Source: Vitrella brassicaformis CCMP3155 (taxonomy: Eukaryota; Protista; Chromerida). Taken from it: a stretch of DNA of 64,000 nucleotides. This document shows positions 1 through 53,400 of this stretch, piece by piece (the first letter of the stretch is position 1; every line of letters begins with the position of its first letter). Location of the stretch: assembly GCA_001179505.1 (NCBI GenBank), contig CDMY01000358.1:1-64000 (forward strand), read 5' to 3'. The notes under the pieces were generated by a model. The model was not told the origin of the DNA. It did not search any database and saw only the letters and a list, made by a program, of their open reading frames with translations. Both the position numbers and the translations under genes were made by a program.

Positions 1-308
1 ACCAACCGACCTTGTTATCATCGATGAGCCAGTTCTTGAGGAAGCTGCATGCCGAAAAAAAAAAGGGGGGGCCCAACTCCGCGGACGGGCGAGTCTTTTG
101 CAATTTGTGTTGTCTTGCCCAGGGGAGAGACAATGCGCATACATGCATTTGTGCGGCCTAGGGCCACATGATATGCATTGTCTGTTCACCAACCGACCTT
201 GTTATCATCGATGAGCCAGTTCTTGAGGAAGCTGCATGCCGACACACACACACACACACACACCACTCCGCGGACGGGCGAGTCTTTTGCAATTTGTGTT
301 GTCTTGCA
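1..308. repeat. Tandem duplication of the small exon CFLKNWLIDDNK plus its upstream intron (period about 188 bp)
   Basis: 1-55 matches 189-243 and about 74-118 matches about 264-307. A (CA)n tract in one copy is replaced by an A-run/G-run in the other. Confidence 0.85.
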
Positions 309-1295
309 TGACATGAGCATACCAGTGCGGCCCTCTGTGTGTGAAGTAGCGGCACTCGACGGTCTCGCGACACTTCTGTCGGCACTCCTCAACCGTCAGA
401 TTGCTGTCCCTCCAATCGTGAGATATCACACTCCTACACACACACACACACACACGGGCAGCCAGCGCCCAGTGAGATGAGAGGTGGCAGTGCTCGCCAC
501 ACCCTCCATCTCACCCACACAGCGTACCAGAGATGGTCGAGATTATATTGGTCGCAAGGCCGTCTCTCGTCGAGCGGGCGGCAGTCCCTCGCACCCTTCT
601 TCCCATGCGCAATGAGGTCGGCGCCCCGCTCATCCACCTCGCCAGTCTGCACAACCGCCGTTACGTTGGTGAAGAGGAAGCACTCGGCTTTCCTGCCCTC
701 ACACCAACAACAACGAACACACAGATTAACACTCACACACACACACGTGTTCCGTTCAATGCATTGATGAATGACATCCTGCGCGCTTCAGTGCACAACC
801 AAGGTGGATGTGATGTGCACTGTCCACAAACCCCCACACACACCAGTCGAAGCTCCAAGCCCTGCAGTCGTCCCTCTCGTCGCATTTCCGGGCGCAGCCG
901 TCTGTGATCCACACCCGCCGCTTGCTCTGCGGTTTGCCGTCCAGGTATGAGCCTCTTAAAGTGGACTGCCACCTCTGCAGTGCACACACAGACAGAACAG
1001 ACAGGCACATCAATCACATCACATCACAGTGCACAGGTACAGACAGGTGTGTCATTTCATTTGTGCCTGTGATGGTTGGCTGACTCACCCAGCATTCACT
1101 GTCGAGTTGGTGGAGGGTAGTGGCCTGCTCCACAAAGCCACCGCTGGGAGGCTGAGCAGCATCAACAACACGCCTCACAAGCAAAATGGTGATGCAGCCG
1201 AGGAGCCGCTGCAGGCGAGGGAGATGCCGTCTGCTTGATCCGATTGATCTGCCGCAGTTGATGAGAGAGCTGCTGGGCAGGCAAACGCTCAGCAT
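1..1295 (-). CDS. PAN/apple-domain extracellular protein, multi-exon, 3' end off the window edge
   Basis: Minus-strand exons read ...DGCARKCDERDDCRAWSFD..., ...KAECFLFTNVT... and ...NLTVEECRQKCRETVECRYFTHRGPH|CFLKNW.... These have the C-x3-C-x5-C-x2-F/W...C-x-L-K spacing of PAN/apple modules. A hydrophobic segment (RLLGCITILLVRRVVDA) lies near the N-terminus. The start ATG is uncertain. Confidence 0.72.
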
Positions 1296-14527: not shown

Positions 14528-15276
14528 GCCTATCACACTTGACTGCGCCGACTACACCCAAAACGGGGAATAGACAGCGAGATCCTAGTGTGCCGGCGCT
14601 CCCTCGGCCCCATGAGCTTAGCTCGCGAACTGCGTCCCCAGTTTCCCTTCACTCCCGCCCCGAGTCCCCCAGCAGGATGCGAAGACCTATGGTATCGGCG
14701 CTGGGCATTTGCTGAAAACATCCATCCACTGGCAGGGACTCCGAGTTGCCTGCAGGCGGCACTGCACAGGCCAACAGGTCGGGTGTGCCCAACACCTGCA
14801 GCTTTATGCAATGGGAGGATAGGATGTCTTGTCTGTTGGTGACACCCACCCATTTGCACTGCCATGCATCCACCTTATATATATTGGGGTCTGTCTGTGC
14901 ACATTTGTTCGTTGTGTGTCGTGTCAGGATGGAGCACGTGGGCATCTCTTTCCCTGCTCTCTGTTTGGTCATTGCGCAGCTGCTGTGCTTTGTGCATGCG
15001 ACCGCCACGGGCATCTCATCGCAGTTGGCGAGATGGCGACGACCCCAACTGCAAGGTGTTGCGTGTGGAGGCGTTCACTCTGGTGGTGCCGCACCCGGCC
15101 GAGACGAGCGGCACCGACCTCCCTTACACATGGGTCGACACCGCACTCGGCAAGGACGAATAGCTCATATTCGATGGGGAGAGCCACCCCCCGGCACTCA
15201 AGCTGAGGTCGGCCGGAGTGAACAAAAGAAAGCACCTCACTGAGCACAAAGTGTGCATGTCCTGCCTGCCCTGCAG

Positions 15277-16061
15277 GGGTGACAAGCATTCGGGTCAGGT
15301 CATGTGGCTGACGTTCAACCATGGCTCCTACTTCATCACCCCCAAGATAGCCGCCGGTCGCCTGTGCCCCCTCCTGCTCGAAGACCCGCAGGCCTCCTTC
15401 TCTCTCTCCTTTCACATCGCCATCGACAAACCCCCCCAGCCGGGCGATATGTACACCCTTTTCCAACACGAGAGCGGCGTCCGCTTCGGCTTCATGACCG
15501 CCTATGACCACGACGGCGACCCCGACCCCGATCAGGTGTTCATCGGCTTTTTGCCGGCCGAGGGCATCCACAAACACACACCCAGAAGGTACAAGCAGCC
15601 GGCCGAGAATGCGACGAAGGGAATTGACACAGAGGCTCTTGAAGAGGAGGACAAAAAGAGGGCGGCCAAGGAGAGTGAGTCTGGGGCCGCAGAAGGAGAG
15701 GTGTCGCTGCTGCAGCAGCTGTGGCACCAGGAACCGACCCCCACCGACGACAGCAACAACAACAACAAGACGGACGCTGAGAAGGCTGCAGAGGAAGAGC
15801 AAGCCACTGTCGAGGCCGAGGAGATCATCAAGCTGCCGCCGACGGGCTACCAGCGGCCCGAGAGCATGATCCCCATCTGCTGGCGGCAGGCAGAGGGCAA
15901 CATCTACACACTGGCCGTGTCGGGGGGCACCTTCAGGCTCTACCGAATGGGTTTCCCTCTGATGGACCCCGCTCCCCTGCCGTACCTCACTGCCGACCTG
16001 CTGTCCCGGGCCGCCCCCATCACACTGGGGTGCGACATGCACGGCAGAAACTGCTTCAAGG
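15277..16061 (+). other. LamG/concanavalin-like domain exon within the giant gene
   Basis: Beta-rich segment SFSLSFHIAID...YTLFQHE...YTLAVSGGTFRLYRMG...ITLGCDMHGRNCFKG|SMRMF, resembling the LamG C-terminal IG...FxGxIxEV pattern, with an acidic low-complexity insert. Confidence 0.55.
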
Positions 16062-16389
16062 GTCGGTGGGTCACGCGAGAAGAAATCGGATTCGAATCCC
16101 CTCCCTGATCGCATTCATGTTTGTGGTGGGAAGTTTGGTGGCCTGGCCGCTGTGGGGTGTGTGTGTGGTTACTTCAGGCAGCATGCGGATGTTTCATTAC
16201 AGCAACATCGGCAACACTACAGCAGAATCAAATGAAGATGCCGTCGTCAACTTCTTCGATCTGCTCGGTCGGTCGGCGCTGCCCTGTGTGGCACCACAAG
16301 GAAGCAGGACAACGGCAGGCGTATACAGAACACAGACATTTGGTGTGTGTGTGTGTGTGCGTGAATGCACTGCAGCCTTGTCTCATCGT

Positions 16390-16469
16390 TGCGGCAATGG
16401 TCAAGTGGACAACGGTGTGGAGGAGTGTGACGTACAGGCGGACCCTGACGGGTGCTCGTGCAGCTGCAG
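16390..16469 (+). other. Myxococcus-type cysteine-rich repeat
   Basis: CGNGQVDNGVEECDVQADPDGCSCSC matches the CGxGx(4-5)xEECD motif. Confidence 0.65.
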
Positions 16470-18413
16470 AAGTGTGTAGCAATGCATCCACACACACACA
16501 CACACACACACATCTGATCTGTCCATTTGCTGTCCTCCCGTCCTGTGTGTGCAGTGAAGTGCCCCCCCTACTTTGGCCTGTTGCAGCAGCAAAATGTCGA
16601 GAAGCGGTGGCTGGCCTCCCTGCCAGACATCGTTGGGGCGCCCATCTCTGAAAAGTACCTGCACCGCGGCTTCGACCACAACAACAGGGTGTCACTGTAC
16701 TGCAAGAACGAGCGGACCCTGAACATCCAGGGCACACCAGGGCCCGACATAGTGACCTACCACGGCGACCTCCCCAATGGGATGGACATGGTCCTGTGCG
16801 GCCACCAGCGCTCGGGCAACTGGACCCCACCCACCATGGACTGCTGGCGTAAGCAAGCAGAAATTGATGTGATGGCTGCAAGTCACTCGTCTGTCTTGAT
16901 GCATCTCTACGTGTGTGGCTGTCTCATTCACTCATTCGGCAGAGGATTGCGATCCGACACAGGAGTCATGGTGGAATGACACCAATGTTGCGGGCGGCAG
17001 CAAGCTGCATCTGGTGGTGCCCCCGCGGCCCACGCGCATCCGGTCTGGCGAAATCATTCGGATGGAGTGCGCCCCCCACAACCCGGTTCCCAAGGGCATG
17101 GACACGTACGAGGTGCTCTTCTGCAACGACGGATTCATCGACCCACTCGGCCTGCCTTGCAAAAGTAAGTCAAGTCAGTGTATAACACACAGAAGACACA
17201 AAGCGACACACACAAGTACACTGCCGGCCGACCGATACGTTGTCTGTCTGCCACATAGGCACGTGCCCGCGAGACATCCTGATGCCGCCCTTCTACAAGC
17301 GTCCAGTGCTCGAGCGCAAGTATGTGGTTGAGGGTGAGGGCTACCAGGACCGGGCCAGGCGCATTGTGACGTGCAAGGACGGCTACGCTGCCGCCAAGGG
17401 CTCGCCATTCGAGAAGGGCGTGCAGGAGAGCGAGTGCATCGACGCAACTGGCAGAAGCTCCTGCTCGAATGCAGAGGTACCTCGACACCGCGGGGACGGA
17501 CCCCTGTACGTATGTGATGTGCGTGCAGGTATGTGTCCGCCGTTCCACATTCCCAGCGCGATAGCCCACCGGTATGTGACGGAGCCCCCGATGGGCCAGG
17601 AGGACCGGCGCTCGGGGGCCACCGTCACAGTCAGCTGTCTGGAGCCATTCAAGGTGCCCGAGGGGCAGTGGGAGCCCCAGACCGTCAGATGCACATGCTA
17701 CGGCACACCAGAGGAATGCGAAGACAATGACGAGCTCTGGCAGTGGTCAGGTCAGTCAGTGGATGACATGACATGACGGAACGAATCTACGTCTGTGTTG
17801 TGTGTCTCCACTCCATGTGTTGGTGTGGTCATGCCATGCCATCTTACAGACTTTTTGCTCGAGTGTGCGGGGAAGTGCCCGCCCTACAAGCCCGCCGAGG
17901 CGGGCTACCAAGTGCAGTACTTCAACGTGCCCGAGAACGTGTACGAGGTGACGAGCGTTGACTTCAACGAGCAGATAGGCCTGTCGTGTGACGTCTCCAA
18001 GGGGTACGGGCCGCACGTCAAGGCCGACAGGCAGGCAGGCAGAGATGCTCAAGTGCCTCGGAGACAAGTACACCATCAAGGGACTCGTCTGCTACAGTCA
18101 GACACACACACACCGCTACACACACCGCTACACACACCGGCCACTCACGTCACGTTTGGTGTATGTATCTGGTCTGGCAGGGCTGTGTTACCACCCGCCG
18201 GACATTCCTCCCGAGGGTTTCACAGTAGAGGTTCAGGGCGACCTGCAGGCGCCCTATCGGCACGGCAGCGAGCGGATCCTCACGTGCACCCAGGGGTACT
18301 CCGTGGAGGACGAGTCCAACATGCCCGCCAAAGACACTCTCCTCTGCAGCAACGGCATGTGGACAGAACGACAGCTCTCATGCAGAGGTAGGGACTCGGG
18401 GGGGGGGGGGGGG

Positions 18414-18713
18414 NNNNNNNNNNNNNNNNNNNNNNNNNNNNNNNNNNNNNNNNNNNNNNNNNNNNNNNNNNNNNNNNNNNNNNNNNNNNNNNNNNNNNNN
18501 NNNNNNNNNNNNNNNNNNNNNNNNNNNNNNNNNNNNNNNNNNNNNNNNNNNNNNNNNNNNNNNNNNNNNNNNNNNNNNNNNNNNNNNNNNNNNNNNNNNN
18601 NNNNNNNNNNNNNNNNNNNNNNNNNNNNNNNNNNNNNNNNNNNNNNNNNNNNNNNNNNNNNNNNNNNNNNNNNNNNNNNNNNNNNNNNNNNNNNNNNNNN
18701 NNNNNNNNNNNNN
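18414..18713. other. Assembly gap (300 N) within an intron of the sushi-Hint gene
   Basis: N run preceded by a long G tract; the flanking exons are phase-compatible. Confidence 0.99.
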
Positions 18714-21700
18714 GGGATGCAAGTGCTCCCTCGCCACACATGCCGCTGTCTTGTTCTGTTCTCTATCCATCAGCTGACTGCCCGGCGCCCGAGAGGGTCC
18801 CTCCGGCGTTCAAGACGATGCCGATGAGTCAGGATGAGTTGGCGGCCAAGCCCAAGCACAAGCACGGCGACGAGATCCGCGTGGTGTGCATCCAGGACGG
18901 CGAGGAGCAGGTGCTCAAATGCCAAGACGGCAAGTGATCCGAGCTGGCACTGCAGTGCCAAGGTCGGGGCGGTCAGTCGGCACGCAACACAAACAGGTGT
19001 GTGTCTCTGTGTCTTTCCGTTGACAGCAAACTGTCCGGTGTTGGCGCTTTCCCTGCCGCCCACACACAAGGGTGAGGCCCCTTTGACTGTGGAGGACGTC
19101 TACCGCGCCGAGCCGGACATCGCCTTGTCGTCGGAGATGAAGCACGCCAGCACAGTGGCCATCCGGTGCAACAGGGAGATGCACTTCCACACCGTCAGTG
19201 GCGGCAAGGAGGACACACTCACTTGCAACGACGGCAAATGGTCGCTACAAATGCTCGTCTGCGGCAGTAAGCCAGCCAGACAGCCAGCCAGCCAGCCGGG
19301 CAGGGGAGACAAGACAAGACAAGACACACAGAACAGACGGCATCACATGAACCCTGTTGGCTGCATCCATCCATCCATCAATCCATTTATCCATCAGGGG
19401 ACTGCCGCGAGCTGCCTTCGTACCTGATGAACGAGGCCTACATCATCACGTCGATCTCGGTGCGCGCCGCCACTCTCGACCCACACCACTTCCCAGAGAT
19501 CCGCAAGCTGCCCAGTGAGTCCGCCGAGCTCACAGTCACAGACGCCACCGAGCTGTCGGCCCTCATCAACGCGGGCAGCCACCCGCACGGCACCAAGGTC
19601 AATGTCAAGTGCAATGTGGAGCATGGCTATGTCCCCGGCAAGGGGTCCATTGAGGAGAGGGGGAGGGAGGAGACCTTCATGTGTGACAGGGGCATCTACT
19701 CGGACCTGCCCATCAGATGCCACAGTAAGTCCGGTGGTTAGAAACACGGACAGACACATCATGACGTGATTGGATCTTTGTGGTGTGCCCGTGACTCCGC
19801 TCCCAGGTCCGTGTGGCAAGCTGCCGCCCTTCACGCCGCACCCTGAGCTCTATCGGCTGCGCCCCATCCCGAACGGCACAGTGGATGACCCACGCAACAC
19901 GTGGCACGGCGCACAGATCGAGGTCAAGTGTGACAAGGCCCAGGGCGCCGTCGGCATATCCGAGGGATTCGACGGCGCTGTCACCGTCTGCACCAACGGC
20001 ACGTGGACGCCATTCCCACCACTTGTCAAATGCGAAAGTCAGCAGGGGAGCCACTGAGCGAAGGAGTTGAGTTACATAGACAGGAAGGATGTGTGTGTGT
20101 GTGTGTGTGTGTGTCGACGATCCATCCCATCCAGTTCCCTGCAAGACGTATGTGCCGCCCGAGGGCATGGTGGTGGTGAGCAAGCCCACCCCGAAGGCGC
20201 CAGTCCCGCACGGTACGCAGATAGTGGTCCGTTGTCTGACGGAGAAGGGCTACTACAACAACACGGGCAGCGGCGAGCAGAGCACGGTCATGTGCAGCAA
20301 CGGAGAATACACCACCAGCGGACTCTTCTGCCACCGTACGTAATGCATTCAATGCCAGCTCCCCCAACACACACACCCGACCCACACGTCTTCCTTCTCC
20401 TTTCTCAGGTCAGTGCAAGGATCTGCAGACGGTGTTGGATCCGGTCCGCTACAACTACAGGATCGTCGAGTCGCTCGATGACATCGACAACCAGACGGCA
20501 TGCTCGGGACACTCTGTGGACGTCTTCAGGCAGGCGGAGACCCGCGAGGCTCAGCTCGCTCTCAGCGCATACCCCAGACATGGATCCTGCGTCAAATTCG
20601 GGTGCGTCCACACCACCACCATACGAACGAATATATGTCACTCTTGTGTGTGTGTGTGTGCGTGTGTGCATTGCAGGTGCCGCACGTCGTTTAGTCCAGA
20701 CGTGGCCCCCCATTTCTGGCGTCGCATGTCGTGTGGGCGGCCGTCGAAGGGCCCCGATGGCTGGAAGACAGACAACTTCGGCACGCCCGACTGCGACGCC
20801 CTCAGGTGTGTCGACGGATACTGGACACCGCCAGCCTTCCAGTGTGTCGGTACGCTACCCAACCAAACCAACCACAGACACACAAAGGATGGGAAGAGCC
20901 TGCCGATGAGAGGTGTGTATGTGTCTGTCTGCAGCGACGTGCAGCGATCCGTTTGAGCATCGGCAGCCGCCCCACGGTGTGGTGCTGGTCAATGTTCGCG
21001 AGACCAAGGAGACCTACAGCAATGGAGACACCATCAAAGTCACTTGCCAAGGTGACCCAGCCAGGGAGGGACGGAGGGAGGGAGGGACACGCACCTCAAA
21101 CATACACACACACACCCATAGCTCTCTACCTGTACGTTTGTGTGTGGCATTGGCCTGCCTGCCTGCCACTTGGGGGTATGGTGTGCAGTGGCTGACAATC
21201 CCTTCGAGAGCTTCACGGCCATATCCCCGGACCCGCCAGGCAAAGTCCAGACACTCACCTGCACCGACGGCGCATTCCCACACGTCTCCATCCAGTGCAG
21301 AAGTATGTATGTCACCGCACAGACACACACAGAGACTCACTCATACACGCACTCGTGTACATCTATCTGGTTGTTCATTCAGAGCGCTGTTTGCCTTACC
21401 ATTCGCCCTACGGGCAGGAGGGCCATGTGATCAGCCACACCAAGGCGCACGTCCCCCCGACGGTTAATGTGGACCAGATCGGCCTCGAGTACATCGACAA
21501 CCCCCGCAAGATGCAGTCGGCCCTCGACGGCGTCATCGAGCACTTCAGCCACGGCAGCAGGAGGTACATCACCTGTGCAGCCGAATGGAGCGACCCCGAC
21601 TGGCACGCCAGCACTGGCGACGTGGTGGCCTGCCAAGACGGAAAGTGGACCAGACAAGAAATCAAATGCAGAAGTCAGTAAGCCGACCGACCGAACCGAC

Positions 21701-24700
21701 ACAGAAGAAAACATTACCCAAATCCCTCTTTCTGTTGGCTGGCATTCCGTTCATTCATTCAGGGCAGTGCAAGTCGACGGCATTCTACCCCCTGGACTCC
21801 ACATATTACAGGGTGACCTACCTCGGCCACGAGCACGTTGACGAGTCATATCACCGGACCATCCCCTCGACGAGCGAGGCCGAGGCGCCCCTCTACCCCC
21901 CCACCCCCCGGGCAGCCCTTTCGTACGCAAGTCGGGCGACAATTATGACGACGGCGATATGATCAAAGTCGAGTGCATCAACAGCGACTACCCCACGGAG
22001 CGTCCGCAGATGCAGGCCGATGGACAGCTTGATTTGCCCTTCTGCGACAAGGACAACAAGTACTGTGTCGTTCGCTGCAACGACGGCGTCTGGACGCAAC
22101 TGCGCGTGTCGTGCCATGGTCAGTCTGACCACAGACAGACAGAGAAAGATAGATACAGACAGCACATATTGATGACCCCGCTGCGGTGCGGTGTGTATGT
22201 CAGCTCGTTGCCCTGCATTTGTGCCCCCCCAACGCGAGAGGATGGTGTGCGAGCCGGCCATGTTCTGCAAAAAGGAACAAAACCTCACCGACGTCAGTCA
22301 GCATACAGGCCAGGCCGAAGCCGCAAGCCTATCCCATTTGGTTGCTGTGCGTTTCTCTCACTCACCGACAGGACGAGAAGGTGAACCGCTACTACGCGAT
22401 GTCGACCAGGGAGACGGGCGATCGGATCTACCGGCATGGTTCGGCGCTGCGTCTGCGGTGCAAGGAGGAGTACGAGCCGCACCCCTTCCCTCAGGAGGAA
22501 GAAATCAAGTGCAGGGACGGCAGGTGGTCCATACCCACCCTTCAATGCTTCAGTCAGCCAGCAACCTTCACACCCCCTCACACCCCCAGATACAGACAGA
22601 TCTCGGTCTGTCTCTTTCACACCCTTTTGTGTGTCATCCAGCGCCCTGCCGTGAAGAGTTCAATCTGCAGAAGGCGCGCATCAATGAGGACACGCGGCGG
22701 TACGAGGCACAGGAGGCCTCAGACAACCCCATCACCGAGACACAGGAGCTGGCCGAGCTGCGGGCCATCGACAAAGGGCCGCCGAGGGAGCTCAAGGACG
22801 TCAAGTCGTCTCTCTTTGCGGACGAGTACGAGCCGCCCAAGGGCAGCAAGGCGGTGCCTCTGTACCTGCACGGGTTCCGCTATGTGATCCGGTGCAACAC
22901 TGACATGGACGTGACGTCAATCGTCAAACAGCCCTTCGACTTCGCCACCTGCTGGGACGGACAGTGGACGGATACCTCAATCTACTGCAAAAATACACAC
23001 ACATACACACGCCCACCAACGTGTGTGTCCACACAGGCCATCTCCCGATCTTTGTATGCGCCTCTCTCTCATCTCAGAGAGCTGCGGTGATCCGGTCAAG
23101 ATGCTGATCCCGACTCTTGAGAAGCCCCATGCGTATGTGATAGAGGCGAGCGGCACCACACACGGCAGCGTCGCCCACGTCACTTGTGCTGAGGGCTTCT
23201 CGCCCGGCGCGGGATATGAGCCGGAGAGGATCGAATGCAACGACGGCCCATGGTGGCCGCCCGCCCTCAGATGCGACCGTCGGCAAACATGCTACACATA
23301 GATAGAGAAGGAAACACATATACAGAGAGAGAGGCGATCGATGCACATCGATGTCGTCCGTCGTGTGCGCATGTATGTGTGTCGTGTCAGCGCACTGCCC
23401 GCCGTATTACGAGTTTCTGAAGGAGAACGATCCCTTGGCGCTTGACGACTCGCGCTACGTGGTGGAGGGATACCATGGGGTGGACATCGTCGGCTCAGCA
23501 TTCAACATCACCTGCCACATATTCACCTCACCCGTACTCAACCAAGCGACCAGTGAATGCACTGGTCCTGAGTGAATGCATGTTGGATGTTGTGTGGTTC
23601 AGGGTCAGCTGGACCCCCTCCCCTCTGGTGTGCCAGGCCCCAAGGCCCGTCAGGAGATCCGCTGTGCGGGCGGCAGGTGGACCGCCAGGGAGCTCAACTG
23701 CTACCGTACGTCACGATCAACCAGCCATGCACACACACAGAGACAGAGAGAGACACACGCCGACAACGCGCCCGCCGGCTCCACAGACAGTGCTGTCTGT
23801 CAATGGCTGGATATTTGTATGTCCGTCAGGCAGCTGCCCCGAGTATGCGCCCGAGAATGAGGTCGAGACGGACGTCATGTTCGGCCCCGCCCACATTGTG
23901 CTCGACGCGGGGGTCGGCCGCGTGCACATTCCCAGCATGGCCGACAGCCTCTTCGCCTCGGTCCAGCACGGAGCCAAAAGGACCCTCAAGTGCTGTGTGG
24001 CGGGCGAGAAGGTGCTGCAGGGGGACGACCCCAATAGGCCAACCACCGAATGCACGTGAGTAAACAATGTTGGGGGGAAAGGAGGGCTGTGTGGGTGAGT
24101 GTTCTGTGGACATGTGCATATGATTCGTGGTCTTCAGGTGGAACTGGGCGACGATCGACAATGAGGGCCCGAAGGAGGCCGTGTCTCAGTGCTCTGACGG
24201 CACATGGACCAAGCCTGACATCGAATGCAGACGTATACACACACAGACTCCATATGTATATATCTCTCTACCTGTCTGTCTGTCTGTCTGTCTGTGTATG
24301 CAATTGAATTATGCATGCTGCATGCATAGCCATGTGCACCCCTCTGGGCGACGAGTACCAGTTTTTCGAGGGGTCTGAGGCCTACAACACGAGCAAGGGC
24401 GCTACGGCAGGCAAGGTCGAGAGCGGGCTCATCTACCCGGGATACTCGGCTCATGTTCGGTGCAAGGAGGGGTACCTGCCTGAGCCACAGCAGGGCAAGT
24501 GGAACAGCAGGCCGGCCGCAAAGGTCACCTGCTCGGGGGGCTTCTTCACCAACATGCCGTTCGTCTGCTACAGTAAGTGAGCATGGCACCGTGACCACAG
24601 ACAACGAGACAGACACAGGTATGTATCAACATCCCCCCGGGGGCCTCCCCTCCTGTGTGCTTTTATCTATCTATCTACACAACAACAGAGGAGTGTCCCT

Positions 24701-25182
24701 TCCCGACGTCCATCGAGGGCGACTCCCACACCCGCTTCAACCTCGACGCAGTGGCCCGCCAGAACGAGGACGCCACGAGTGCGGCTGACCTCAGATCTCT
24801 GTGGCACAAGAACCCGTGGCTGAGACGGCACGGCAGCGTGTTTTATGCCTTCTGCTGGTCGGGCAGCCGCGCAGAGCCCCTGAAGGCCCAGCTCACGGGC
24901 AAGCAGGACATGGGCAACCGATACGTGAGGGACAAGTACAAGTGGTTCTGGAGTAGGGGACACCACACCGACCCTGTGGCAGAGAGGACCTATGCTGGGG
25001 ACACGGCCTTCGACCACAAGCGGTTCCAGTGCCTGTACGGCAAATGGGTGCCGCGAACACCGCCCTACATGAAGTGTGTCGAGTCCTACTACCAGTGGCG
25101 CAGGCCCGAGCCGCGGAAGCCGCCCCCTCCTCCCCCCCCACCGCCCAAGAAGCCGCCCTCCAGGCCACCCCCACCAAAGGCA

Positions 25183-25836
25183 TGTGTGGCGTCCTTTATG
25201 CCGGTGGTGCGGCTGAGTGAGGACGGAGGCCGGGCGGAGACGGTGCCCGTGTCGATGTTGCAAGTGGGGGATCGCGTCATGACTGCAGGGGGGACTGGAA
25301 GACGGCGGCCGGCCTTCACTGAGGTGTATTATCGGCGTAGCTATGCCGAGGAGCTGACCAGGGCCACTGCACTCATGTTTGAACCAGGCCACCGGCGGCT
25401 GGTGCTATCACCATCCCACAGGCTGCCTGTGTGTCGGCCGCCGCCAAACAGAGGTGTCTGTCCTTCACAGCGGCATCATCAGATTATCGGGGATACAGCG
25501 AACGGGTCTCATGTTGCTATGCCATCGGCTGATAATGATGATGACTATGACGGTGGCTGTGGGGACGAGACGCGGTGGCGCTCTATTGCGGCACGTGAGG
25601 TCCGAGCGGGTGACTATGTTCTCTTGGTGGGGGGAGGGGGGGGATATCAAAGTGGGGACGATGGCCTGCTGATAAGGGCGCAAGTGGCCGAGGCACACAC
25701 TGAATGGCAGGTGAACGAGCAAGAGGGATGGATGGATGGATGGACGGATCGGCCATGTGCTCAGGATGTGGGATATGAGCTGGTCTACACGTTGAGTGGT
25801 CTGTTTGTGGCGGGTGGGGCGGTCATCACCGACAGT
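25183..25836 (+). other. Hedgehog-type Hint (autoprocessing) domain
   Basis: KA|CVASFMPVVRLSEDGGRAETVPVSMLQVGDRVMT...FTEVYY...LVLSPSHRLPV...IAAREVRAGDYVLL...GYELVYTLSGLFVAGGAVIT. This aligns block by block with Hh Hint (CF...LxxGDRV, SEV, LTxxH, AxxVxxGD, GxYAPLTxxGxxxVxGxxAS). A 54-nt in-frame intron lies at 25711-25764. Confidence 0.85.
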
Positions 25837-26768
25837 GACGACCCGTTCGACGAGTACATGCCCTGGACACTCATCACCAACATAGATGCAAGGTCTGACA
25901 AAAGGCCAGGCACGGCCACTGTGGAAGGATGGGATGGGCGTCTTAGCTATGGCCATACCGTATGTGTGCTTCTGGGTGTGTGTGTGTACAGGGTTATTTA
26001 TTTGCTGTGGGGCAGGCAGGGGGTGGAATCTCCACTATTCCGCAGTTTCTATGAGTAAGCGCGTATCCAAACACGCTAAGACACACACACACACACACAC
26101 ACGTACACACGTAGAGCAGCGGCGTGAATGTGTCTCCGTCTGTCTGTCTGTCCGTCTGCCCGTGAATGTGATGTGACAGAGCGTCGAGCGCCTTGGAAGA
26201 CAATATGCAGGCGACCGTTCAGTCGCTGCTGGCCTCCCTCTCCCCCTTCCTCCCCGTGTGTGTGGTCCGGTGGCTGCTCGTTTTGTGTCTTGCCGCATAT
26301 GTGTTTGCTTTACTGGCCCTGGTTGCTGTGCCGTGTGTCGTTGTGGCTAGATATAGGACGCTGAGGTGGTCACTAGCCATGTGCATTGGTGCAAGGGGGG
26401 AAGAAGGCGGGAGAAGATCACCATGCCTCTCCGGCGTTGATGCACACTGATCTCTTTCTCTCTCCCTCTCTGCCTGTCTGTCTGTCTGTGTGCCTGCCTG
26501 CCGGATATGTTCCCGGCTGTGTGTGTGTGCTGTCGGTCCATCGCACGTGGATATCGATCGCAAGTGAACTCGTGTGTGTGTGTGTGTTTGTGTGTGTGGA
26601 GGCACAGCCTAGCTGCTTGACATTCCGGATCCACGGGATGATTCAGCCAACGGCCGTGTGCTGTGCTGTGCTGTGGGTGTGTTTCACCAGGTCAGTCATT
26701 GATAGACATTCAATCAATGCATCCATCCATCCATCACACACACACACACAAATGTGCATACCACACCC

Positions 26769-30183: not shown

Positions 30184-30483
30184 NNNNNNNNNNNNNNNNN
30201 NNNNNNNNNNNNNNNNNNNNNNNNNNNNNNNNNNNNNNNNNNNNNNNNNNNNNNNNNNNNNNNNNNNNNNNNNNNNNNNNNNNNNNNNNNNNNNNNNNNN
30301 NNNNNNNNNNNNNNNNNNNNNNNNNNNNNNNNNNNNNNNNNNNNNNNNNNNNNNNNNNNNNNNNNNNNNNNNNNNNNNNNNNNNNNNNNNNNNNNNNNNN
30401 NNNNNNNNNNNNNNNNNNNNNNNNNNNNNNNNNNNNNNNNNNNNNNNNNNNNNNNNNNNNNNNNNNNNNNNNNNNNNNNNNNN
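30184..30483. other. Assembly gap (300 N)
   Basis: N run after a G-rich sequence. Confidence 0.99.
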
Positions 30484-38025: not shown

Positions 38026-38325
38026 NNNNNNNNNNNNNNNNNNNNNNNNNNNNNNNNNNNNNNNNNNNNNNNNNNNNNNNNNNNNNNNNNNNNNNNNNNN
38101 NNNNNNNNNNNNNNNNNNNNNNNNNNNNNNNNNNNNNNNNNNNNNNNNNNNNNNNNNNNNNNNNNNNNNNNNNNNNNNNNNNNNNNNNNNNNNNNNNNNN
38201 NNNNNNNNNNNNNNNNNNNNNNNNNNNNNNNNNNNNNNNNNNNNNNNNNNNNNNNNNNNNNNNNNNNNNNNNNNNNNNNNNNNNNNNNNNNNNNNNNNNN
38301 NNNNNNNNNNNNNNNNNNNNNNNNN
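38026..38325. other. Assembly gap (300 N)
   Basis: N run flanked by G homopolymers. Confidence 0.99.
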
Positions 38326-42108: not shown

Positions 42109-43120
42109 ATGAAGTTCTCGACGACTGTGAGCTCAGACCGGCGAAAATCGCGTAAGGCTCACTTCCAGGCCTCCTCGTCGGAGCGCCGGAAGATCATGTC
42201 GGCGCCGCTCAGCAAGGACCTCCGCACCAAATACAACGTACGTACACACAAGACACACAAGGGGGGAGGGGTGGCAGGCGTCGTGTCACTGACGGGAGAG
42301 ATCTGTCCTCGCCTATATCGGTATGTACTGGCACTTGTGTTGTGTGGGTGCAGGTGCGGAGTCTGCCCATCCGTAAGGATGACGAGGTCATGATAGTGCG
42401 AGGCCACTGCCACGACCGTGAGGGCAAGGTCACCCAGGTGTACCGCAAGAAGTGGGTCATCCACGTCGAGCGAGTCACACGCGACAAGGCCAACGGTACA
42501 GACAGACAGACACCCAAACAGCCCATCCCCCCCCCCCCCCCCCNNNNNNNNNNNNNNNNNNNNNNNNNNNNNNNNNNNNNNNNNNNNNNNNNNNNNNNNN
42601 NNNNNNNNNNNNNNNNNNNNNNNNNNNNNNNNNNNNNNNNNNNNNNNNNNNNNNNNNNNNNNNNNNNNNNNNNNNNNNNNNNNNNNNNNNNNNNNNNNNN
42701 NNNNNNNNNNNNNNNNNNNNNNNNNNNNNNNNNNNNNNNNNNNNNNNNNNNNNNNNNNNNNNNNNNNNNNNNNNNNNNNNNNNNNNNNNNNNNNNNNNNN
42801 NNNNNNNNNNNNNNNNNNNNNNNNNNNNNNNNNNNNNNNNNNNCCCCCCCCCCCCCCCCCCCCCCCCACACACACACACGCGGCGTCGGTTCGGTTGGCT
42901 CACTGGGTGTCCTGTCTGTCTGTCTGTCTGTCTGTCTGTGTCGGCACGTGTGCGTGACCGACCAGGTTCGAGTGTGCCGATCGGTATTCACCCTTCAAAG
43001 GTGGTCATCACGAAGCTGAAGCTGGACAAGGACCGCAAGGCGCTGCTGGACCGCAAGAACCGGGAGACCAGGAAGGGCGGCAAATACGACAGGGACGTGC
43101 ACATGTCCAGAGTCGATTGA
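42109..43120 (+). CDS. RPL26: 60S ribosomal protein L26 (uL24)
   Basis: [44 protein letters not shown]|[16 protein letters not shown]...[17 protein letters not shown]|[30 protein letters not shown]. Three exons; a gap lies in intron 2. Confidence 0.98.
42544..42843. other. Assembly gap (300 N) in RPL26 intron 2
   Basis: N run flanked by C homopolymers. Confidence 0.99.
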
Positions 43121-50400: not shown

Positions 50401-53400
50401 TCGCCTTGGGACGCACCAGCGGGGGCTCACCGTTGAAGATGATGGACAGGACTGACTTGGGCAGCAGCTTGGTGCGACCGTCAGACACGCTCAGGGGGTC
50501 GATGCCGCCCTCCCAGCTGCCGAAGCCATTCAGCTGCCGAGACATACTCCTCTTCCAATCCTGAATGAAAGCCGACAGAGGAGGGGGGAGNNNNNNNNNN
50601 NNNNNNNNNNNNNNNNNNNNNNNNNNNNNNNNNNNNNNNNNNNNNNNNNNNNNNNNNNNNNNNNNNNNNNNNNNNNNNNNNNNNNNNNNNNNNNNNNNNN
50701 NNNNNNNNNNNNNNNNNNNNNNNNNNNNNNNNNNNNNNNNNNNNNNNNNNNNNNNNNNNNNNNNNNNNNNNNNNNNNNNNNNNNNNNNNNNNNNNNNNNN
50801 NNNNNNNNNNNNNNNNNNNNNNNNNNNNNNNNNNNNNNNNNNNNNNNNNNNNNNNNNNNNNNNNNNNNNNNNNNNNNNNNNNNNNNNNNNGAGGGTGGAG
50901 GCGGCACACACATACAGCCATGGAAGTGAGTGAATGAGTGATGCCCGTCTGTCTGTCTGTCTGTCTGTCTGCGCCTCCCTCACTGTGCCGTGCAGTGCAG
51001 TGCAGTGCCTGTGTGTGGTGGTGACTGTGCTGTGTCTGTCGTTATGCCTGTGTGTTTGACCCACCTGGAATTGGCTGAGCTCCGACTCATCGACGGCCCG
51101 ACTGCCGGATATGCCTCCCCTGGGCGCCGCAGCCTCCGCCCTGCCCCACGGGCGCTGGCCGACCCCATTGACGCCCTCGTGTGTGTGGTGTTGGTTGGTG
51201 GTGGTGGTGTCATCGCCGTCCTTGAGGGGCGCGTTGAGGCTGGCCATGACGGGGTGATGGTGGCACAAGATGGTCGTGTAGTCGATGGCCTTGGGACGCA
51301 CACACGTCAGGTCGTCATGATCCATCGACACACACTCCACCTCAGGATGGTCACCCACATCGCCGTTCAGCACCGCCGCACCGGCGGGGCCGCATCCCTC
51401 GCCCTCTAGCGCACTCTGGCCACCCATGGCCCCTCCTGGCTGCTCACCACCACCACTACCACCAGCGGCAGCGGCAGCGGCAGACTCGGACACATCCATT
51501 GGGCGAGGGGCGGGGGATGCCGCTAGATCCGCACCGTTGGCAGGGTGGTCGTTGGGTGGTGGTTGGGGCGGTATTGGTTGTTGGTTGTGGGTGGTGGGTT
51601 TGCGGAGGGAGAGTGCCTTGTGTCGTCCGATGGCATCCTCGCCGTTGCACCAGTCTTGGAACCACGTGAAGGGCACCCATGTCCTGTCGTCAAGCATCTC
51701 GGAGATGAAGTCCTCCCTCTTCTTGACCAGGGCCGGCCGCCTGACGTCGGGGTCCTCCAGCCGCAAGGTGACATCCTTGTCGCGCAGCTTGCGGCCCAGG
51801 CTGCCAATGGCCTTGTCAATGGCCTCGTCCACACTGTTCACCTCACTCTTGCGGTGCTCGACAAATGCCTCCGCCTTGACCTTCTGACGGTTGTACTCCT
51901 CCTGTGAGTAGACAACACACACAGCAGACAGGCAGACAGCCAAATGAGAGGACGAAGGTGCAATGCAAACGGTGCCTCCCTCCCTCCCTGCCTGCCTGCC
52001 TGCCCGCCTGCCTCCCTCCGACATGCATGTATGTATGTATGTATGTATGTGGGTTGTCGGATACATACAGATGTACACACACACCTATACGTACGGTACG
52101 TATACACATCCAATAAATACCTGGTCCCTGACGAGTATGCCGTTCTTTTCCTGGACGACCTCCTGCACCTCTGGCGGCAGCTCAGCCTTGTCCATCGGCT
52201 GCCAGTCGCGACGCTTATACAGGATGAGATAGGCCTTCTGGCTCGAGTTGAAGCGCCGCTTGGCCGCAGTGGGATGGTCGTCGGACACGACGTCCTTGCG
52301 CTGTTTGTTGCGTGGCGGGTTGCGCCGCGGCCGGGGCCCGCCTGGTGGACCACCACCACCACCACCGTCACCTCCACCTCCCTCGACGGGTGGGGCCTCC
52401 TCGTCCATCGGTAAGGGGTCCGACGGCTGGTCAGGGTCAGAGGCGATCGGCCCGGGCGGCCCATCATCGCCGTCCACACCTCCTGGCTGGTGGTCCACGT
52501 CTCCATCACCACCACCATCAGCAGCAGCGGCAGCGGCAGCGGCAGCGGCAGGTTCGGTGTCAGGGAGGGTGACGTTCTGTGCGACCTCCTCGTTGGATCG
52601 GAAGCAAAGCTTCTTCTCCTTGACGGTTGTGTCGTCATACTCGACCCACTTCCAGGGACCAGTGTACTTGACTGGCCGGTCCAGCGGGGCGTCCTCGCTG
52701 GCCATCTCGTCGTCTCCTCCCCCCGCCTTGTCCTTCTCGGCCTTCGCCCTGCCCTTCTTGCCTCGCCCGTTGCCGGCGGGGGGTGGGGGGGGGGGTGGAG
52801 GCGGTGGGAGGGCAGCCTCTTGCTCCTTCTTGTCCACCTCAGCCTGCTTGCGCTTCTTCTGACGGTCGCTCTGGCGCATGCCGGGCATGGCCTCCTGCAG
52901 GCCCTCTCCAGGATCGGGCGCATCGGGCTTGACATGCTCATCGATGCCATTGACCTGTTGGTCGAGGCCGTCTGCACCATCCCCCTCGACGACATCCATG
53001 TCGTCTGGCTCCTCCTTGGCCGCCACCGCATCAACGTCCATCTTGACGCCAGCTTCGTGACGATCTGCCCCCTCGGCTGGCGGGTGGGTGGGCTGCCCGT
53101 CAGCCATGTCATCATCATGGGGCTGGGTGCCACCCTTGTGGCCTCCGTCGGCCCCTCCTCTGCCTCCCTTGGGCGGGGCACCACCCTTGAGGCCCTGTCC
53201 AGGCATGACCGCACGTGCGGGCTGCGGTGCCTCGTCCACCTCGGCCTCGAGGTCGATGACCGGTGGCTGCCGAGGGGGCCGGTGTGGCGAAGAGGGCGAG
53301 AAGAAGTCTTGAATGGTGGGTTGGCCGGGGGAGCGCTCGTCGGAGTCCCTGGCCTTCTTCTTCTTGCCCGCCCCCCGCCCCCCGGCCCCACCACCCCCCT

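What the first reader, a model, noticed from the sequence alone, without database searches (positions are those of the whole stretch)
14929..26450. Giant sushi/CCP-array surface protein fused to a Hedgehog-type Hint autoprocessing domain
Seen: a signal peptide, a LamG-like domain, a CGNG...EECD repeat, about 20 insert-bearing sushi-like modules, a poly-Pro stalk ([24 protein letters not shown]), then C-initiated Hint blocks. These are followed by an SRR-like amphipathic segment (MPWTLITNIDAR|VIYLLWG...SPLFRSFYE) and a hydrophobic helix (VVRWLLVLCLAAYVFALLALVAVPCVVV). Established: Hog-type Hint domains cleave at their N-terminal Cys, and in Hedgehog they attach a sterol to the released N-fragment; Hog proteins are known in some protists. 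Inference: this architecture would be a very large adhesive ectodomain that releases itself, possibly lipid-modified, from a membrane anchor, i.e. a Hedgehog-like shedding system in a unicellular alveolate. I do not recognise this domain combination.
Basis: partly seen in the sequence, partly recalled or inferred. Interest (0 to 1): 0.88.

Follow-up and report, generated by a model that had tools for sequence, protein, structure and literature searches.

The report
Broken giant sushi–Hedgehog-type self-cleaving gene
This stretch of the coral-associated alga Vitrella brassicaformis holds one copy of a gene family that joins a giant secreted sushi-repeat protein to a Hedgehog-type self-cleaving domain and a membrane anchor, but this copy carries about seven disabling mutations and is most likely a transcribed pseudogene.

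Summary
On the + strand, 14929-26450, lies a gene of about 34 exons (Vitrella brassicaformis CCMP3155, contig CDMY01000358.1). In order it encodes a signal peptide, a ConA/LamG-like domain, a small Cys-rich motif, 22 sushi/CCP modules, a poly-Pro linker, a Cys-initiated Hint domain, a conserved helical tail and one transmembrane helix.

- **Sushi:** a profile of the modules hits only CCP proteins in the PDB (factor H, E 2.6e-12).
- **Hint:** the AlphaFold model matches the Hedgehog autoprocessing domain best (1AT0/6TYY, Z about 16, 142 of 146 residues), with the Cys in register with Hedgehog Cys258.
- **Gap:** the assembly gap 18414-18713 lies inside an intron, because an RNA contig splices across it.
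- **Lesions:** the copy is broken by two premature stops, four frame breaks and a GT>AT splice donor. Five of the seven lie in the stretch where DNA contigs from two runs match the window exactly. RNA carries the TGA and retains the AT-donor intron. The annotation therefore splits the locus into four genes.

Paralogues annotated as single long models (CEM24571.1, CEM37770.1 and one of 2743 aa) show the same architecture uninterrupted. No relatives outside Vitrella were found. Self-cleavage is inferred, and sterol transfer is doubtful. The scan had already noted other copies of this family on other pieces of the same genome.

The parts
14929..15018 (+). Start codon and signal peptide (frame 0), followed by a frame break at about 15019-15025
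   Evidence: Translation. It is one of only two segments with Kyte-Doolittle >1.9 in the spliced model. The downstream domain continues in frame 1, and no usable intron explains the shift. This break was not checked with reads.
15026..16267 (+). ConA/LamG-like domain. Exons 15026-15160, 15164-15207, 15277-16061, 16178-16267, with an acidic low-complexity insert at about 15560-15850.
   Evidence: Colinear with the N-termini of paralogues P0005 and P0009. ESM-feature hits are all Laminin_G_3 at 0.95. The AF2 model is poor (pLDDT 46), but all Foldseek hits are ConA-like jelly rolls. No Pfam hit.
15161..15163 (+). In-frame TAG inside the LamG-like domain (..GKDE*LIFDG..)
   Evidence: Paralogues read through this stretch (..GTEGVIFDG..). 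Annotated gene model 1 ends here. Not checked with reads.
16376..16471 (+). Small Cys-rich exon (CGNG..EECD..CSCSC)
   Evidence: Conserved in P0005 (CGDGEV..EECD). No Pfam hit for the window exon. The analogous stretch of P0002 gives DUF4215 below cut-off (E 8e-5).
16555..18387 (+). CCP/sushi modules 1-6. Exons 16555-16848, 16943-17164, 17259-17476, 17529-17750, 17850-18096, 18181-18387.
   Evidence: Phase-1 donors sit right after the last Cys plus one residue. Exon lengths are multiples of 3. Pfam Sushi hits. Module profile against the PDB.
17444..17445 (+). One-base frame break inside module 3, between ..ECID (frame 1) and NWQKLLLECR (frame 0)
   Evidence: The paralogue reads C-T-D-G-A-W there. 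DNA contigs of runs X1 and X3 match the window with no differences.
18029..18041 (+). Frame break inside module 5, within a (CAGG)n run
   Evidence: frame 1 to frame 2. The X1 contig covers 17400-18413 with 0 gaps.
18388..18773 (+). Intron that contains the assembly gap 18414-18713. The gap follows a poly-G run.
   Evidence: RNA contig (X11, record 8) joins 18197-18387 directly to 18774-18960, GT..AG. DNA contigs of X1 and X3 also stop at the gap edges.
18774..24572 (+). CCP/sushi modules 7-21, on 21 exons. Modules 12, 13, 16, 19 and 20 are each split by one extra intron.
   Evidence: RNA-confirmed junctions: 18962>19027, 19724>19807, 20037>20135, 20335>20409, 21302>21383, 21673>21763. Other junctions come from the annotated model P0001, paralogue colinearity and frame logic.
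18935..18937 (+). TGA at the conserved Trp of module 7 (C-Q-D-G-K-*-S-E-L-A-L-Q-C)
   Evidence: Present in the DNA contigs and in the spliced RNA contig with no differences.
21880..21900 (+). Frame break inside module 15, in a poly-C tract (frame 2 to frame 1). Annotated models 3 and 4 split here.
   Evidence: The X1 contig covers 21126-22497 with 0 gaps.
22993..22994 (+). AT where the phase-1 GT donor of module 17 should be. The intron is 22993-23077.
   Evidence: DNA contigs are identical. RNA contig 22934-23224 runs unspliced through this intron. The annotated model P0001 avoids it with an artificial splice that drops the last strand of the module.
24689..25110 (+). CCP-like module 22, large and insert-bearing
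   Evidence: It lies in the same exon as the linker and the Hint start. Conserved in P0003, P0005 and P0009.
25111..25182 (+). Poly-Pro linker ending ..PPPPKA
   Evidence: Absent from paralogue P0003, so it is a linker and not a conserved element.
25183..25845 (+). Hint module. Cys 25183-25185, internal 54-nt intron 25711-25764, SPSH motif, ends ..VITDSDDP.
   Evidence: AF2 model from an alignment of 5 paralogues. Foldseek on the PDB: top hit 1AT0, E 7e-6, TM 0.76. VIA-align: Z 16.1/15.9 to 6TYY/1AT0, 142 of 146 residues, rmsd 2.5, model 18..217 to Hedgehog 260..403. AFDB neighbours are Hedgehog/Hog proteins. Pfam Hint_2 reaches only E 0.023.
25846..26270 (+). Conserved helical tail after Hint, ARR/SRR-like. 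Exon parts 25846-25892, 25992-26054 and 26180-26270; introns 25893-25991 and 26055-26179.
   Evidence: The most conserved block of the family (D.P.D.Y.PW...N.D.R..Y.L.G). Predicted helices 230-254 with pLDDT 83-87. AFDB Hog hits align out to residue about 252. Splice phases fit.
26271..26348 (+). Transmembrane helix, followed by a 33-residue basic tail and the TGA stop at 26448-26450
   Evidence: Highest hydropathy of the whole model (KD 2.97). The exon is homologous to the tail of P0002 (..MQATV..TM..CRY). It is missing from the annotated model P0001, which stops at 26058.

Best explanation
The locus is one gene-sized unit (14929-26450, + strand, about 34 exons, about 2730 codons). It belongs to a Vitrella family of giant type I surface proteins. 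The domain order is: signal peptide, ConA/LamG-like domain, small Cys-rich motif, 22 sushi/CCP modules, Pro-rich linker, Hog-type domain (Hint fold plus conserved helical tail), one transmembrane helix, short cytoplasmic tail.

In the paralogues annotated as uninterrupted, the likely mechanism is Hedgehog-like. In the secretory pathway the first Cys of the Hint module attacks the preceding peptide bond (N-to-S acyl shift, helped by the conserved S-x-x-H histidine). The thioester is then resolved by water or another nucleophile. This cuts the CCP ectodomain from the membrane-anchored Hint remnant. These steps are inferred, not shown.

This particular copy cannot do that. It carries two premature stops, four frame breaks and a GT>AT donor. 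Five of the seven lie in the stretch where independently assembled read contigs match the window, and the TGA stop and AT donor are also seen in RNA. It is therefore most likely a still-transcribed, recently decayed pseudogene, and the annotation cuts it into four gene models.
For: - Organism and annotation split.
- Exon model with no internal stops inside each block, and only two hydrophobic segments (signal peptide and TM).
- CCP identity.
- Hint fold, best match Hedgehog HhC, Cys in register with Cys258. AFDB neighbours are Hog/Hedgehog proteins. The only PDB sequence hits of the family profile are 1AT0/6TYY, in register at GDRVLS and T-P-A-H/S-P-S-H.
- Tail and TM homology with P0002.
- Same architecture in single long annotated models: P0005 (2679 aa), P0009 (2743 aa), P0002 (2886 aa).
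- Lesions. DNA contigs of runs X1 and X3 are identical to the window over 17400-23399. RNA run X11 is spliced at the predicted junctions, crosses the gap, carries the TGA and retains the AT-donor intron.
Against: - The two 5' lesions (about 15020 and TAG 15161) were not checked with reads.
- X1 and X3 may be the data the assembly was built from. They exclude consensus errors but not strain-specific or systematic errors.
- RNA coverage is thin (word depth about 5).
- No single RNA contig covers the whole gene, so one transcript from 14929 to 26450 is not shown.
- Pfam Hint models stay below threshold.
- The AF2 model has mean pLDDT 65, and the Cys itself lies in a low-confidence stretch.
- Cleavage activity is untested. 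The Hedgehog Asp46 equivalent is not acidic in this copy, and the motif-J Cys is Asp.
Confidence: 0.7

Rival explanations
1. The gene is intact and functional in the organism, and the stops and frameshifts are sequencing or assembly errors in a draft genome. Two of the frame breaks sit in a poly-C tract and a CAGG microsatellite.
For: Two of the four frame breaks lie in low-complexity tracts. The contig has several gaps. Cys, Trp and splice-phase patterns are otherwise very well preserved. The locus is transcribed and spliced.
Against: Logan contigs of two run sets (word depth about 50 and about 11) reproduce the window with no substitutions or indels across five of the lesions. A separate RNA data set carries the TGA and the AT donor, and leaves that intron unspliced. 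The TGA, the TAG and the AT donor are base substitutions, not homopolymer slips.
Confidence: 0.12
2. The locus really is four separate genes, as annotated (133, 571, 917 and 989 aa). The Hint-bearing product starts at the Met at 22010.
For: The public annotation. Paralogue P0003 is also annotated as starting at the homologous Met.
Against: - All four pieces are colinear, in order, with the single 2679-aa paralogue P0005.
- The model boundaries fall exactly at the lesions (TAG 15161; poly-C shift about 21890), inside CCP modules.
- A product starting at 22010 would lack a signal peptide, although it is made of disulfide-rich extracellular modules.
- The P0003 locus is split by its own in-frame TAG in the same module. 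That explains the shared start Met as simply the next ATG downstream.
Confidence: 0.05
3. The family's Hint domain is catalytically inert, a structural or binding module. The proteins would stay uncleaved, membrane-anchored adhesins.
For: Pfam Hint scores are below threshold. The Asp46 position is not conserved (Arg, Gln or Glu among paralogues). The motif-J Cys is Asp. One subgroup carries 40-100-residue hydrophobic inserts right after the Cys.
Against: The two residues needed for the first step, the N-terminal Cys and the His of S-x-x-H, are kept in all six paralogues despite only 36-45% identity. The Cys is in structural register with Hedgehog Cys258. [quoted passage not shown]
Confidence: 0.2
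4. The recurrent in-frame stops and frameshifts in several family members are decoded, by readthrough or programmed frameshifting, rather than being decay.
For: This copy has TAG and TGA stops plus four frame breaks. The P0003 locus has an in-frame TAG. An earlier scan note reports a frameshifted copy elsewhere in the genome. The transcripts are still spliced.
Against: The lesions are of unlike kinds, at non-homologous sites, and show no shared sequence context. The gene's own terminator is TGA. The dead donor leads to intron retention. Birth-and-death decay of a large paralogous family is the simpler reading.
Confidence: 0.03

Closest known systems
Hedgehog C-terminal autoprocessing (Hog = Hint + SRR) domain, Drosophila Hh-C (PDB 1AT0, 6TYY)
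   Same: Same fold (Z about 16, 142 of 146 residues, rmsd 2.5). N-terminal Cys in the same register. A T/S-x-x-H motif. It follows a secreted N-terminal 'cargo' and is itself followed by a helical extension.
   Different: The cargo is a roughly 2400-residue LamG-like plus CCP array, not the about 20-kDa Hedge domain. There is no conserved acid at the Asp46 position, and Asp replaces Cys143. The tail sequence is unlike the SRR motifs K and L and is followed by a transmembrane helix. Sequence similarity is too weak for the Pfam thresholds.
Protist and fungal Hog proteins (Burglin 2008, PMC2362128: dinoflagellates, Cryptosporidium, red algae, mosses, Guillardia, Glomus GIN1)
   Same: Non-metazoan, secreted proteins that end in a Hog domain with lineage-specific N-terminal regions. 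According to that paper, the motif-J Cys is often Ser, Thr or Asp. Guillardia and Glomeromycota Hog models are among the nearest AFDB structural neighbours.
   Different: The N-terminal regions described there are short, often of the order of 100 residues, and have no recognised domains. 'Sushi' does not occur in that paper, and no transmembrane anchor after the Hog domain is described there. No sequence-level relatives of this family outside Vitrella were found.
Complement-control-protein (sushi/CCP) arrays, e.g. factor H and factor XIII B chain
   Same: Four-Cys, one-Trp modules in long tandem arrays. The profile hits are specific to CCP proteins. Modules sit on symmetric phase 1-1 exons. 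From my own knowledge, animal CCP modules are typically organised this way.
   Different: Many modules here carry 10-60-residue inserts between Cys1 and Cys2 (66-116 residues per module). They sit in an alga, fused to a Hog domain.
Chromerid and apicomplexan extracellular domain repertoire (Woo et al. 2015, PMC4501334)
   Same: That paper notes HINT domains shared by chromerids, Cryptosporidium and Gregarina, and notes expansions of SUSHI-containing proteins.
   Different: Its supplementary table lists HINT examples only from Chromera and lists Sushi examples separately. The sushi-plus-Hint fusion in Vitrella is not described in the text or supplements I could read. The figure itself could not be seen.
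Inteins and bacterial intein-like (BIL) domains
   Same: Same Hint fold (Z 13-15).
   Different: There is no C-terminal His-Asn followed by a Cys/Ser/Thr splice junction; the module ends ..VITDSDDP. It lies at the end of a secreted protein rather than inside a host protein. Hedgehog ranks above every intein in both structure searches.

Membership tests
Hog-type (Hedgehog C-terminal) autoprocessing domain | Hint fold | tested here: met
   Foldseek on the PDB: top hit 1AT0, E 7e-6, TM 0.76. VIA-align: Z 16.1/15.9, 142 of 146 residues aligned.
Hog-type (Hedgehog C-terminal) autoprocessing domain | Nucleophilic Cys as first residue of the Hint module | tested here: met
   Cys at 25183-25185. Model residue 18 aligns to Hedgehog 260, so model Cys16 corresponds to Cys258. 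A Cys followed by Ile/Val is present in all six paralogues.
Hog-type (Hedgehog C-terminal) autoprocessing domain | Block B T-x-x-H (Thr69/His72) | tested here: met
   L-S-P-S/T/N-H-R-L-P. The Ser, Pro and His are invariant in the five aligned paralogues. It aligns to T-P-A-H of 1AT0. Thr is replaced by Ser.
Hog-type (Hedgehog C-terminal) autoprocessing domain | Asp46 general base used for sterol transfer | tested here: inconclusive
   The profile alignment to 1AT0 puts Arg (this copy), Gln/Arg (P0003/P0002) or Glu (P0005/P0004; the same motif in P0009) at that position. That alignment is not significant (E 0.34), so the residue match may be off by a position.
Hog-type (Hedgehog C-terminal) autoprocessing domain | Motif J Cys (Cys143, S-C-Y-A) | tested here: not met
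   By structural register it is replaced by an invariant Asp (T-D-S-D). Burglin 2008 reports the same kind of replacement in moss and red-algal Hog domains.
Hog-type (Hedgehog C-terminal) autoprocessing domain | C-terminal adduct/sterol-recognition extension after the Hint module | tested here: met
   A conserved tail of about 45 residues, predicted helical with pLDDT 83-87. AFDB Hog/Hedgehog hits align through residue about 252. Which ligand it recognises, if any, cannot be tested here.
Hog-type (Hedgehog C-terminal) autoprocessing domain | Pfam Hint (PF01079) or Hint_2 (PF13403) score above the gathering cut-off | tested here: not met
   Hint_2: 15.5 bits against 28.4 (window), 14.0 (P0001). 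Hint: 15.6 against 29.7 (P0003).
Hog-type (Hedgehog C-terminal) autoprocessing domain | Autocatalytic cleavage at X|Cys | not testable with these tools
   Needs biochemistry on an intact paralogue.
Intein | C-terminal Asn plus a downstream Cys/Ser/Thr for splicing, embedded in a host protein | tested here: not met
   The module ends ..VITDSDDPFDEY with no His-Asn junction. It lies at the C-terminal end of a secreted protein.
Sushi/CCP (PF00084) | Module of about 60 residues with four Cys and a conserved Trp, recognised by the family profile | tested here: met
   Invariant C..C..C.G.W..C pattern. Pfam Sushi at 25.3, 22.1 and 22.0 bits against a cut-off of 20.7. The module profile hits only CCP proteins in the PDB, factor H at E 2.6e-12.
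Laminin G / ConA-like lectin fold | Beta-jelly-roll fold or a family profile match | tested here: inconclusive
   No Pfam hit and no PDB sequence hit. ESM-feature neighbours are all Laminin_G_3. The AF2 model is poor (pLDDT 46) and its fold hits, all ConA-like, have TM below 0.4.
DUF4215 Cys-rich repeat | Pfam PF13948 match | tested here: not met
   No hit for 16378-16470. The paralogue P0002 stretch scores 23.3 bits against a cut-off of 27.
Functional protein-coding gene | Uninterrupted reading frame with usable splice sites | tested here: not met
   TAG 15161, TGA 18935, frame breaks at about 15020, 17444, 18035 and 21889, and an AT donor at 22993. The five lesions within 17400-23399 are confirmed in read contigs.

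The most novel reading that the evidence does not exclude
The intact paralogues are membrane-anchored Hog proteins that cut themselves at X|Cys and release, perhaps with a covalent lipid or other adduct, a 2400-residue CCP/LamG adhesive ectodomain. That would be a Hedgehog-style release mechanism used for a giant adhesin in a free-living relative of Apicomplexa. Broken but still transcribed copies such as this one would then reflect fast birth-and-death turnover of the surface family.
Probability: 0.25. Interest if true: 0.75.

Novelty: new variant of a known kind. Interest (0 to 1): 0.45.

Why it matters
Hog domains are known outside animals, but what they release, and why, is almost unknown. 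Here the cargo is identifiable: a giant LamG-like plus CCP array. The Hog domain is tied to the membrane by its own transmembrane helix, which gives a concrete, testable model of self-shedding of an adhesin in the closest photosynthetic relatives of apicomplexan parasites. It also bears on the origin of 'animal-like' adhesion domains in this lineage, because the CCP modules sit on phase 1-1 exons. For genome annotation, the result shows that four adjacent Vitrella gene models are fragments of one decayed gene, and that at least one paralogue locus is split in the same way.

Tried and rejected
- **Pfam on raw ORF pieces and on the paralogues:** Sushi passes only for a few modules. Hint is below threshold. 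Nothing is found for the LamG-like part or the CGNG motif.
- **Search for relatives outside Vitrella:** I ran phmmer of the Hint region against 1.84 billion representatives, a word-indexed search with P0005 residues 2330-2679, and one with the family profile A1. They returned only Vitrella paralogues plus three spurious repeat proteins.
- **LamG profile against PDB sequences:** only noise, WD40 proteins at E above 0.2.
- **Two suspected lesions turned out to be ordinary introns:** the 'TGA' at about 23570 lies in intron 23534-23602, and the odd stretch 20602-20676 is also an intron. My first reading of frame 2 after 18935 was wrong. The module continues in frame 1 through the TGA.
- **Shared start Met of P0001 and P0003:** I considered that it marks a real internal start or a conserved recoding site. 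I rejected this because the P0003 locus has its own TAG about 70 nt upstream in the same exon.
- **TM exon downstream of P0005 and P0003:** none found. The TM anchor is therefore shown only for this copy and for P0002.
- **Runs that gave nothing:** a second sequencing-run run failed. Run X13 gave only microsatellite matches.

Full report
**Where and what.** The window is the first 64 kb of contig CDMY01000358.1 of Vitrella brassicaformis CCMP3155. Window and record coordinates coincide. The public annotation places four consecutive + strand models on the finding's interval:
- 14612-15163 (133 aa)
- 15302-17564 (571 aa)
- 17591-21962 (917 aa)
- 22010-26058 (989 aa; CEM05444.1, named 'Sushi domain-containing protein' by UniRef; P0001 here).

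**Gene structure.**
- Stop-to-stop translation shows Cys-rich modules hopping between frames.
- The donors of almost all modules lie one base after the codon that follows the last Cys, so they are phase 1.
- Matching acceptors give exons whose lengths are multiples of three.
- I combined these rules with the annotated model P0001, colinearity with the 2679-aa paralogue P0005 and RNA junctions. The result is a model of about 34 exons, 33 placed introns (52-386 nt, median 89) and about 2730 codons.
- Once the sequence is cut at six breaks, each block is free of internal stops.
- The model has only two strongly hydrophobic segments: the N-terminal signal peptide, and a helix at 26271-26348.

**The assembly gap.** The gap 18414-18713 begins 26 nt after the phase-1 donor at 18388 and follows a poly-G run. 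DNA contigs of runs X1 and X3 also end at the two gap edges, so the gap is not closed. However, a spliced contig of RNA run X11 joins 18197-18387 directly to 18774-18960 (GT..AG) and runs on into the next exon at 19027. The gap is therefore intronic. The flanking exons are consecutive and in phase, and no module is hidden in it.

**Sushi/CCP modules.** I count 22.
- Nine clean modules align with invariant Cys1-4 and the G-x-W motif.
- The profile of that alignment hits only CCP proteins among 177,635 PDB sequences: factor H at E 2.6e-12, factor XIII B chain at 3.8e-10, then CFHR proteins, C1s, viral complement-control proteins, MCP and CR2.
- Pfam Sushi passes its gathering cut-off for 17186-17773, 18183-18386 and 23080-23277.
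- Modules are 66-116 residues long because of inserts between Cys1 and Cys2.

**N-terminal parts.**
- The LamG-like call is plausible but not proven. Pfam and PDB sequence searches find nothing. Protein-language-model neighbours of the paralogue's equivalent region are uniformly Laminin_G_3 at 0.95. A poor AF2 model (pLDDT 46) retrieves only ConA-like jelly rolls, at TM below 0.4.
- The CGNG..EECD exon is conserved in P0005 but gives no Pfam hit. A paralogue stretch is sub-threshold for DUF4215.

**The Hint domain.**
- Cys 25183-25185 follows the poly-Pro linker in the same exon as the last CCP module, so fusion of at least one CCP module to the Hint domain needs no splicing evidence.
- Sequence support alone is weak. 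Hint_2 reaches E 0.023. The family profile finds only 1AT0 and 6TYY in the PDB, at E about 0.35, although in register at G-D-R-V-L-S and at T-P-A-H against S-P-S-H.
- Structure is decisive. An AF2 model built on five paralogues (mean pLDDT 65, core strands 76-89) has the Hedgehog autoprocessing domain as its best PDB match in Foldseek (1AT0, E 7e-6, TM 0.76).
- VIA-align agrees: Z 16.1 and 15.9, with 142 of 146 residues aligned at 2.5 A. Inteins and BIL domains follow at Z 13-15.
- The register (model 18..217 to Hedgehog 260..403) puts the family's Cys on Hedgehog Cys258. It puts an invariant Asp (T-D-S-D) on Hedgehog Cys400, the motif-J Cys.
- In AFDB the nearest clusters after the paralogue are protist 'Hint domain-containing' proteins, animal Hedgehogs and Glomeromycota AIG1-Hog proteins. 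Many alignments run to residue about 252 of the model, that is, through the helical tail.
- There is no intein-type C-terminal junction.
- I therefore file the domain as Hog-type with two departures. The acid at the Asp46 position is not conserved (Arg here, by a non-significant alignment). The motif-J Cys is Asp, a replacement Burglin 2008 reports for moss and red-algal Hogs.

**Tail and anchor.**
- The block after the Hint module (D.P.D.Y.PW...N.D.R..Y.L.G..V....F) is the best conserved part of the family and is predicted helical.
- The annotated model ends at a TAA at 26056. However, a GTAAGC donor at 26055 (phase 2) and an acceptor at 26179 join in frame to an exon that encodes ..EDNMQATVQSLL.., the TM helix and a basic tail.
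- This exon is homologous to the C-terminus of paralogue P0002, which has the same MQATV motif, a TM helix and a C-R-Y motif.
- No such exon was seen downstream of P0005 or P0003. The anchor is therefore shown for one subgroup only.

**Lesions.** There are seven.
1. A frame break between the signal peptide (frame 0) and the LamG-like domain (frame 1) at about 15020.
2. A TAG at 15161, where the paralogues read through.
3. A one-base break at 17444-17445 inside the C-x-D-G-x-W motif of module 3.
4. A break within (CAGG)n at about 18035.
5. A TGA at 18935, exactly at the conserved Trp of module 7.
6. A break in a poly-C tract at about 21889.
7. AT in place of the GT donor at 22993.

Logan contigs of runs X1 and X3 match the window over 17400-23399 with no substitutions or indels. 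The spliced RNA contig carries the TGA. An RNA contig runs unspliced through the AT-donor intron. Lesions 1 and 2 lie outside the one stretch I could lay and remain unverified. Two other suspected lesions proved to be normal introns. The annotation's gene boundaries coincide with lesions 2 and 6 and lie close to lesion 3.

**The family.**
- Exhaustive phmmer and two word-indexed searches found only Vitrella proteins: CEM24571.1 (P0005, 2679 aa; signal peptide, LamG-like domain, CGDG motif, CCP array, Hog), a 2743-aa protein (P0009), CEM37770.1 (P0002, 2886 aa; F5/8-type C domains at the N-terminus, CCP array, Hog, TM), CEM37761.1 (P0003) and CEM10019.1 (P0004, 400 aa; named 'Hint domain-containing').
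- The P0003 locus is itself split by an in-frame TAG in the module homologous to the one holding lesion 6 here. That explains why both annotated fragments start at the same conserved Met.
- Earlier notes of this scan describe other copies on other pieces of this genome, one followed up as frameshifted. I did not test those.

**Mechanism and status.**
- Shown here: the fold, the catalytic-residue register, the topology and the lesions.
- Inferred: in intact members, an N-to-S acyl shift at X|Cys and resolution of the thioester free the ectodomain from the TM-anchored Hog remnant. I consider sterol transfer unlikely (about 0.15), given the non-acidic Asp46 position.
- This copy most likely makes no full-length protein. 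Translation from the first ATG would stop after about 77 codons.

**Literature.** Burglin 2008 (PMC2362128) describes Hog proteins in alveolates and other protists, with short, unrecognised N-terminal regions. Woo et al. 2015 (PMC4501334) mention HINT domains and Sushi expansions in chromerids, but list HINT examples only from Chromera. No paper in the searchable library holds all of hedgehog, hint, sushi and autoprocessing. The family is thus a new variant of a known kind, already auto-annotated but undescribed. The locus itself is a decayed member.

Noticed in passing
L003:9640-10120 (contig CDMY01000954.1, locus of paralogue CEM37761.1): This paralogue is also annotated as two genes (1569 aa plus 1025 aa). 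An in-frame TAG at L003:9932-9934 interrupts the CCP module homologous to window 21763-22118, and the second model starts at the next conserved Met. At least two family members are therefore broken.
   Followed up: partly
window 24600-26450 (run search): Marine sediment and microbial mat metagenome runs from 2023-2025 hold 5-32% of the sampled 31-mers of this stretch. Near-identical Vitrella-like DNA therefore seems to occur in environmental samples.
   Followed up: no
window 16555-24572: Almost every CCP module sits on its own symmetric phase 1-1 exon, with the donor one base after Cys4 plus one residue. From my own knowledge this is the exon organisation typical of animal CCP genes. It is relevant to how these 'animal-like' modules spread in the alveolate lineage.
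   Followed up: partly
P0005 about 2375-2450; P0004 about 45-190; P0009 C-terminal region: One subgroup of paralogues carries a 40-100-residue insert, with a hydrophobic helix-like stretch, between the catalytic Cys (C-I-D-P/A..) and the first conserved Hint strand. No TM exon was seen downstream of P0005. The insert could be an alternative membrane anchor.
   Followed up: no
window 18026-18045, 19264-19307, 20076-20121, 20631-20673, 21053-21126: Introns, and one exon, carry (CAGG)n, (CCAG)n, (AC)n and (GGGA)n microsatellites that recur throughout the genome. They cause spurious joints and depth spikes when reads are laid (word depth up to 1360 at 19200-19399).
   Followed up: no
window 18414-18713, 30184-30483, 38026-38325, 42544-42843, 50591-50890: There are five 300-N assembly gaps in the 64-kb window. 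The one studied follows a poly-G run, and independent Logan contigs break there too.
   Followed up: partly
window 17477-17528 and 25711-25764: Two very short introns (52 and 54 nt) mark the lower end of intron size in this gene. The second lies inside the Hint domain and is in frame, so its retention would add 18 residues.
   Followed up: no
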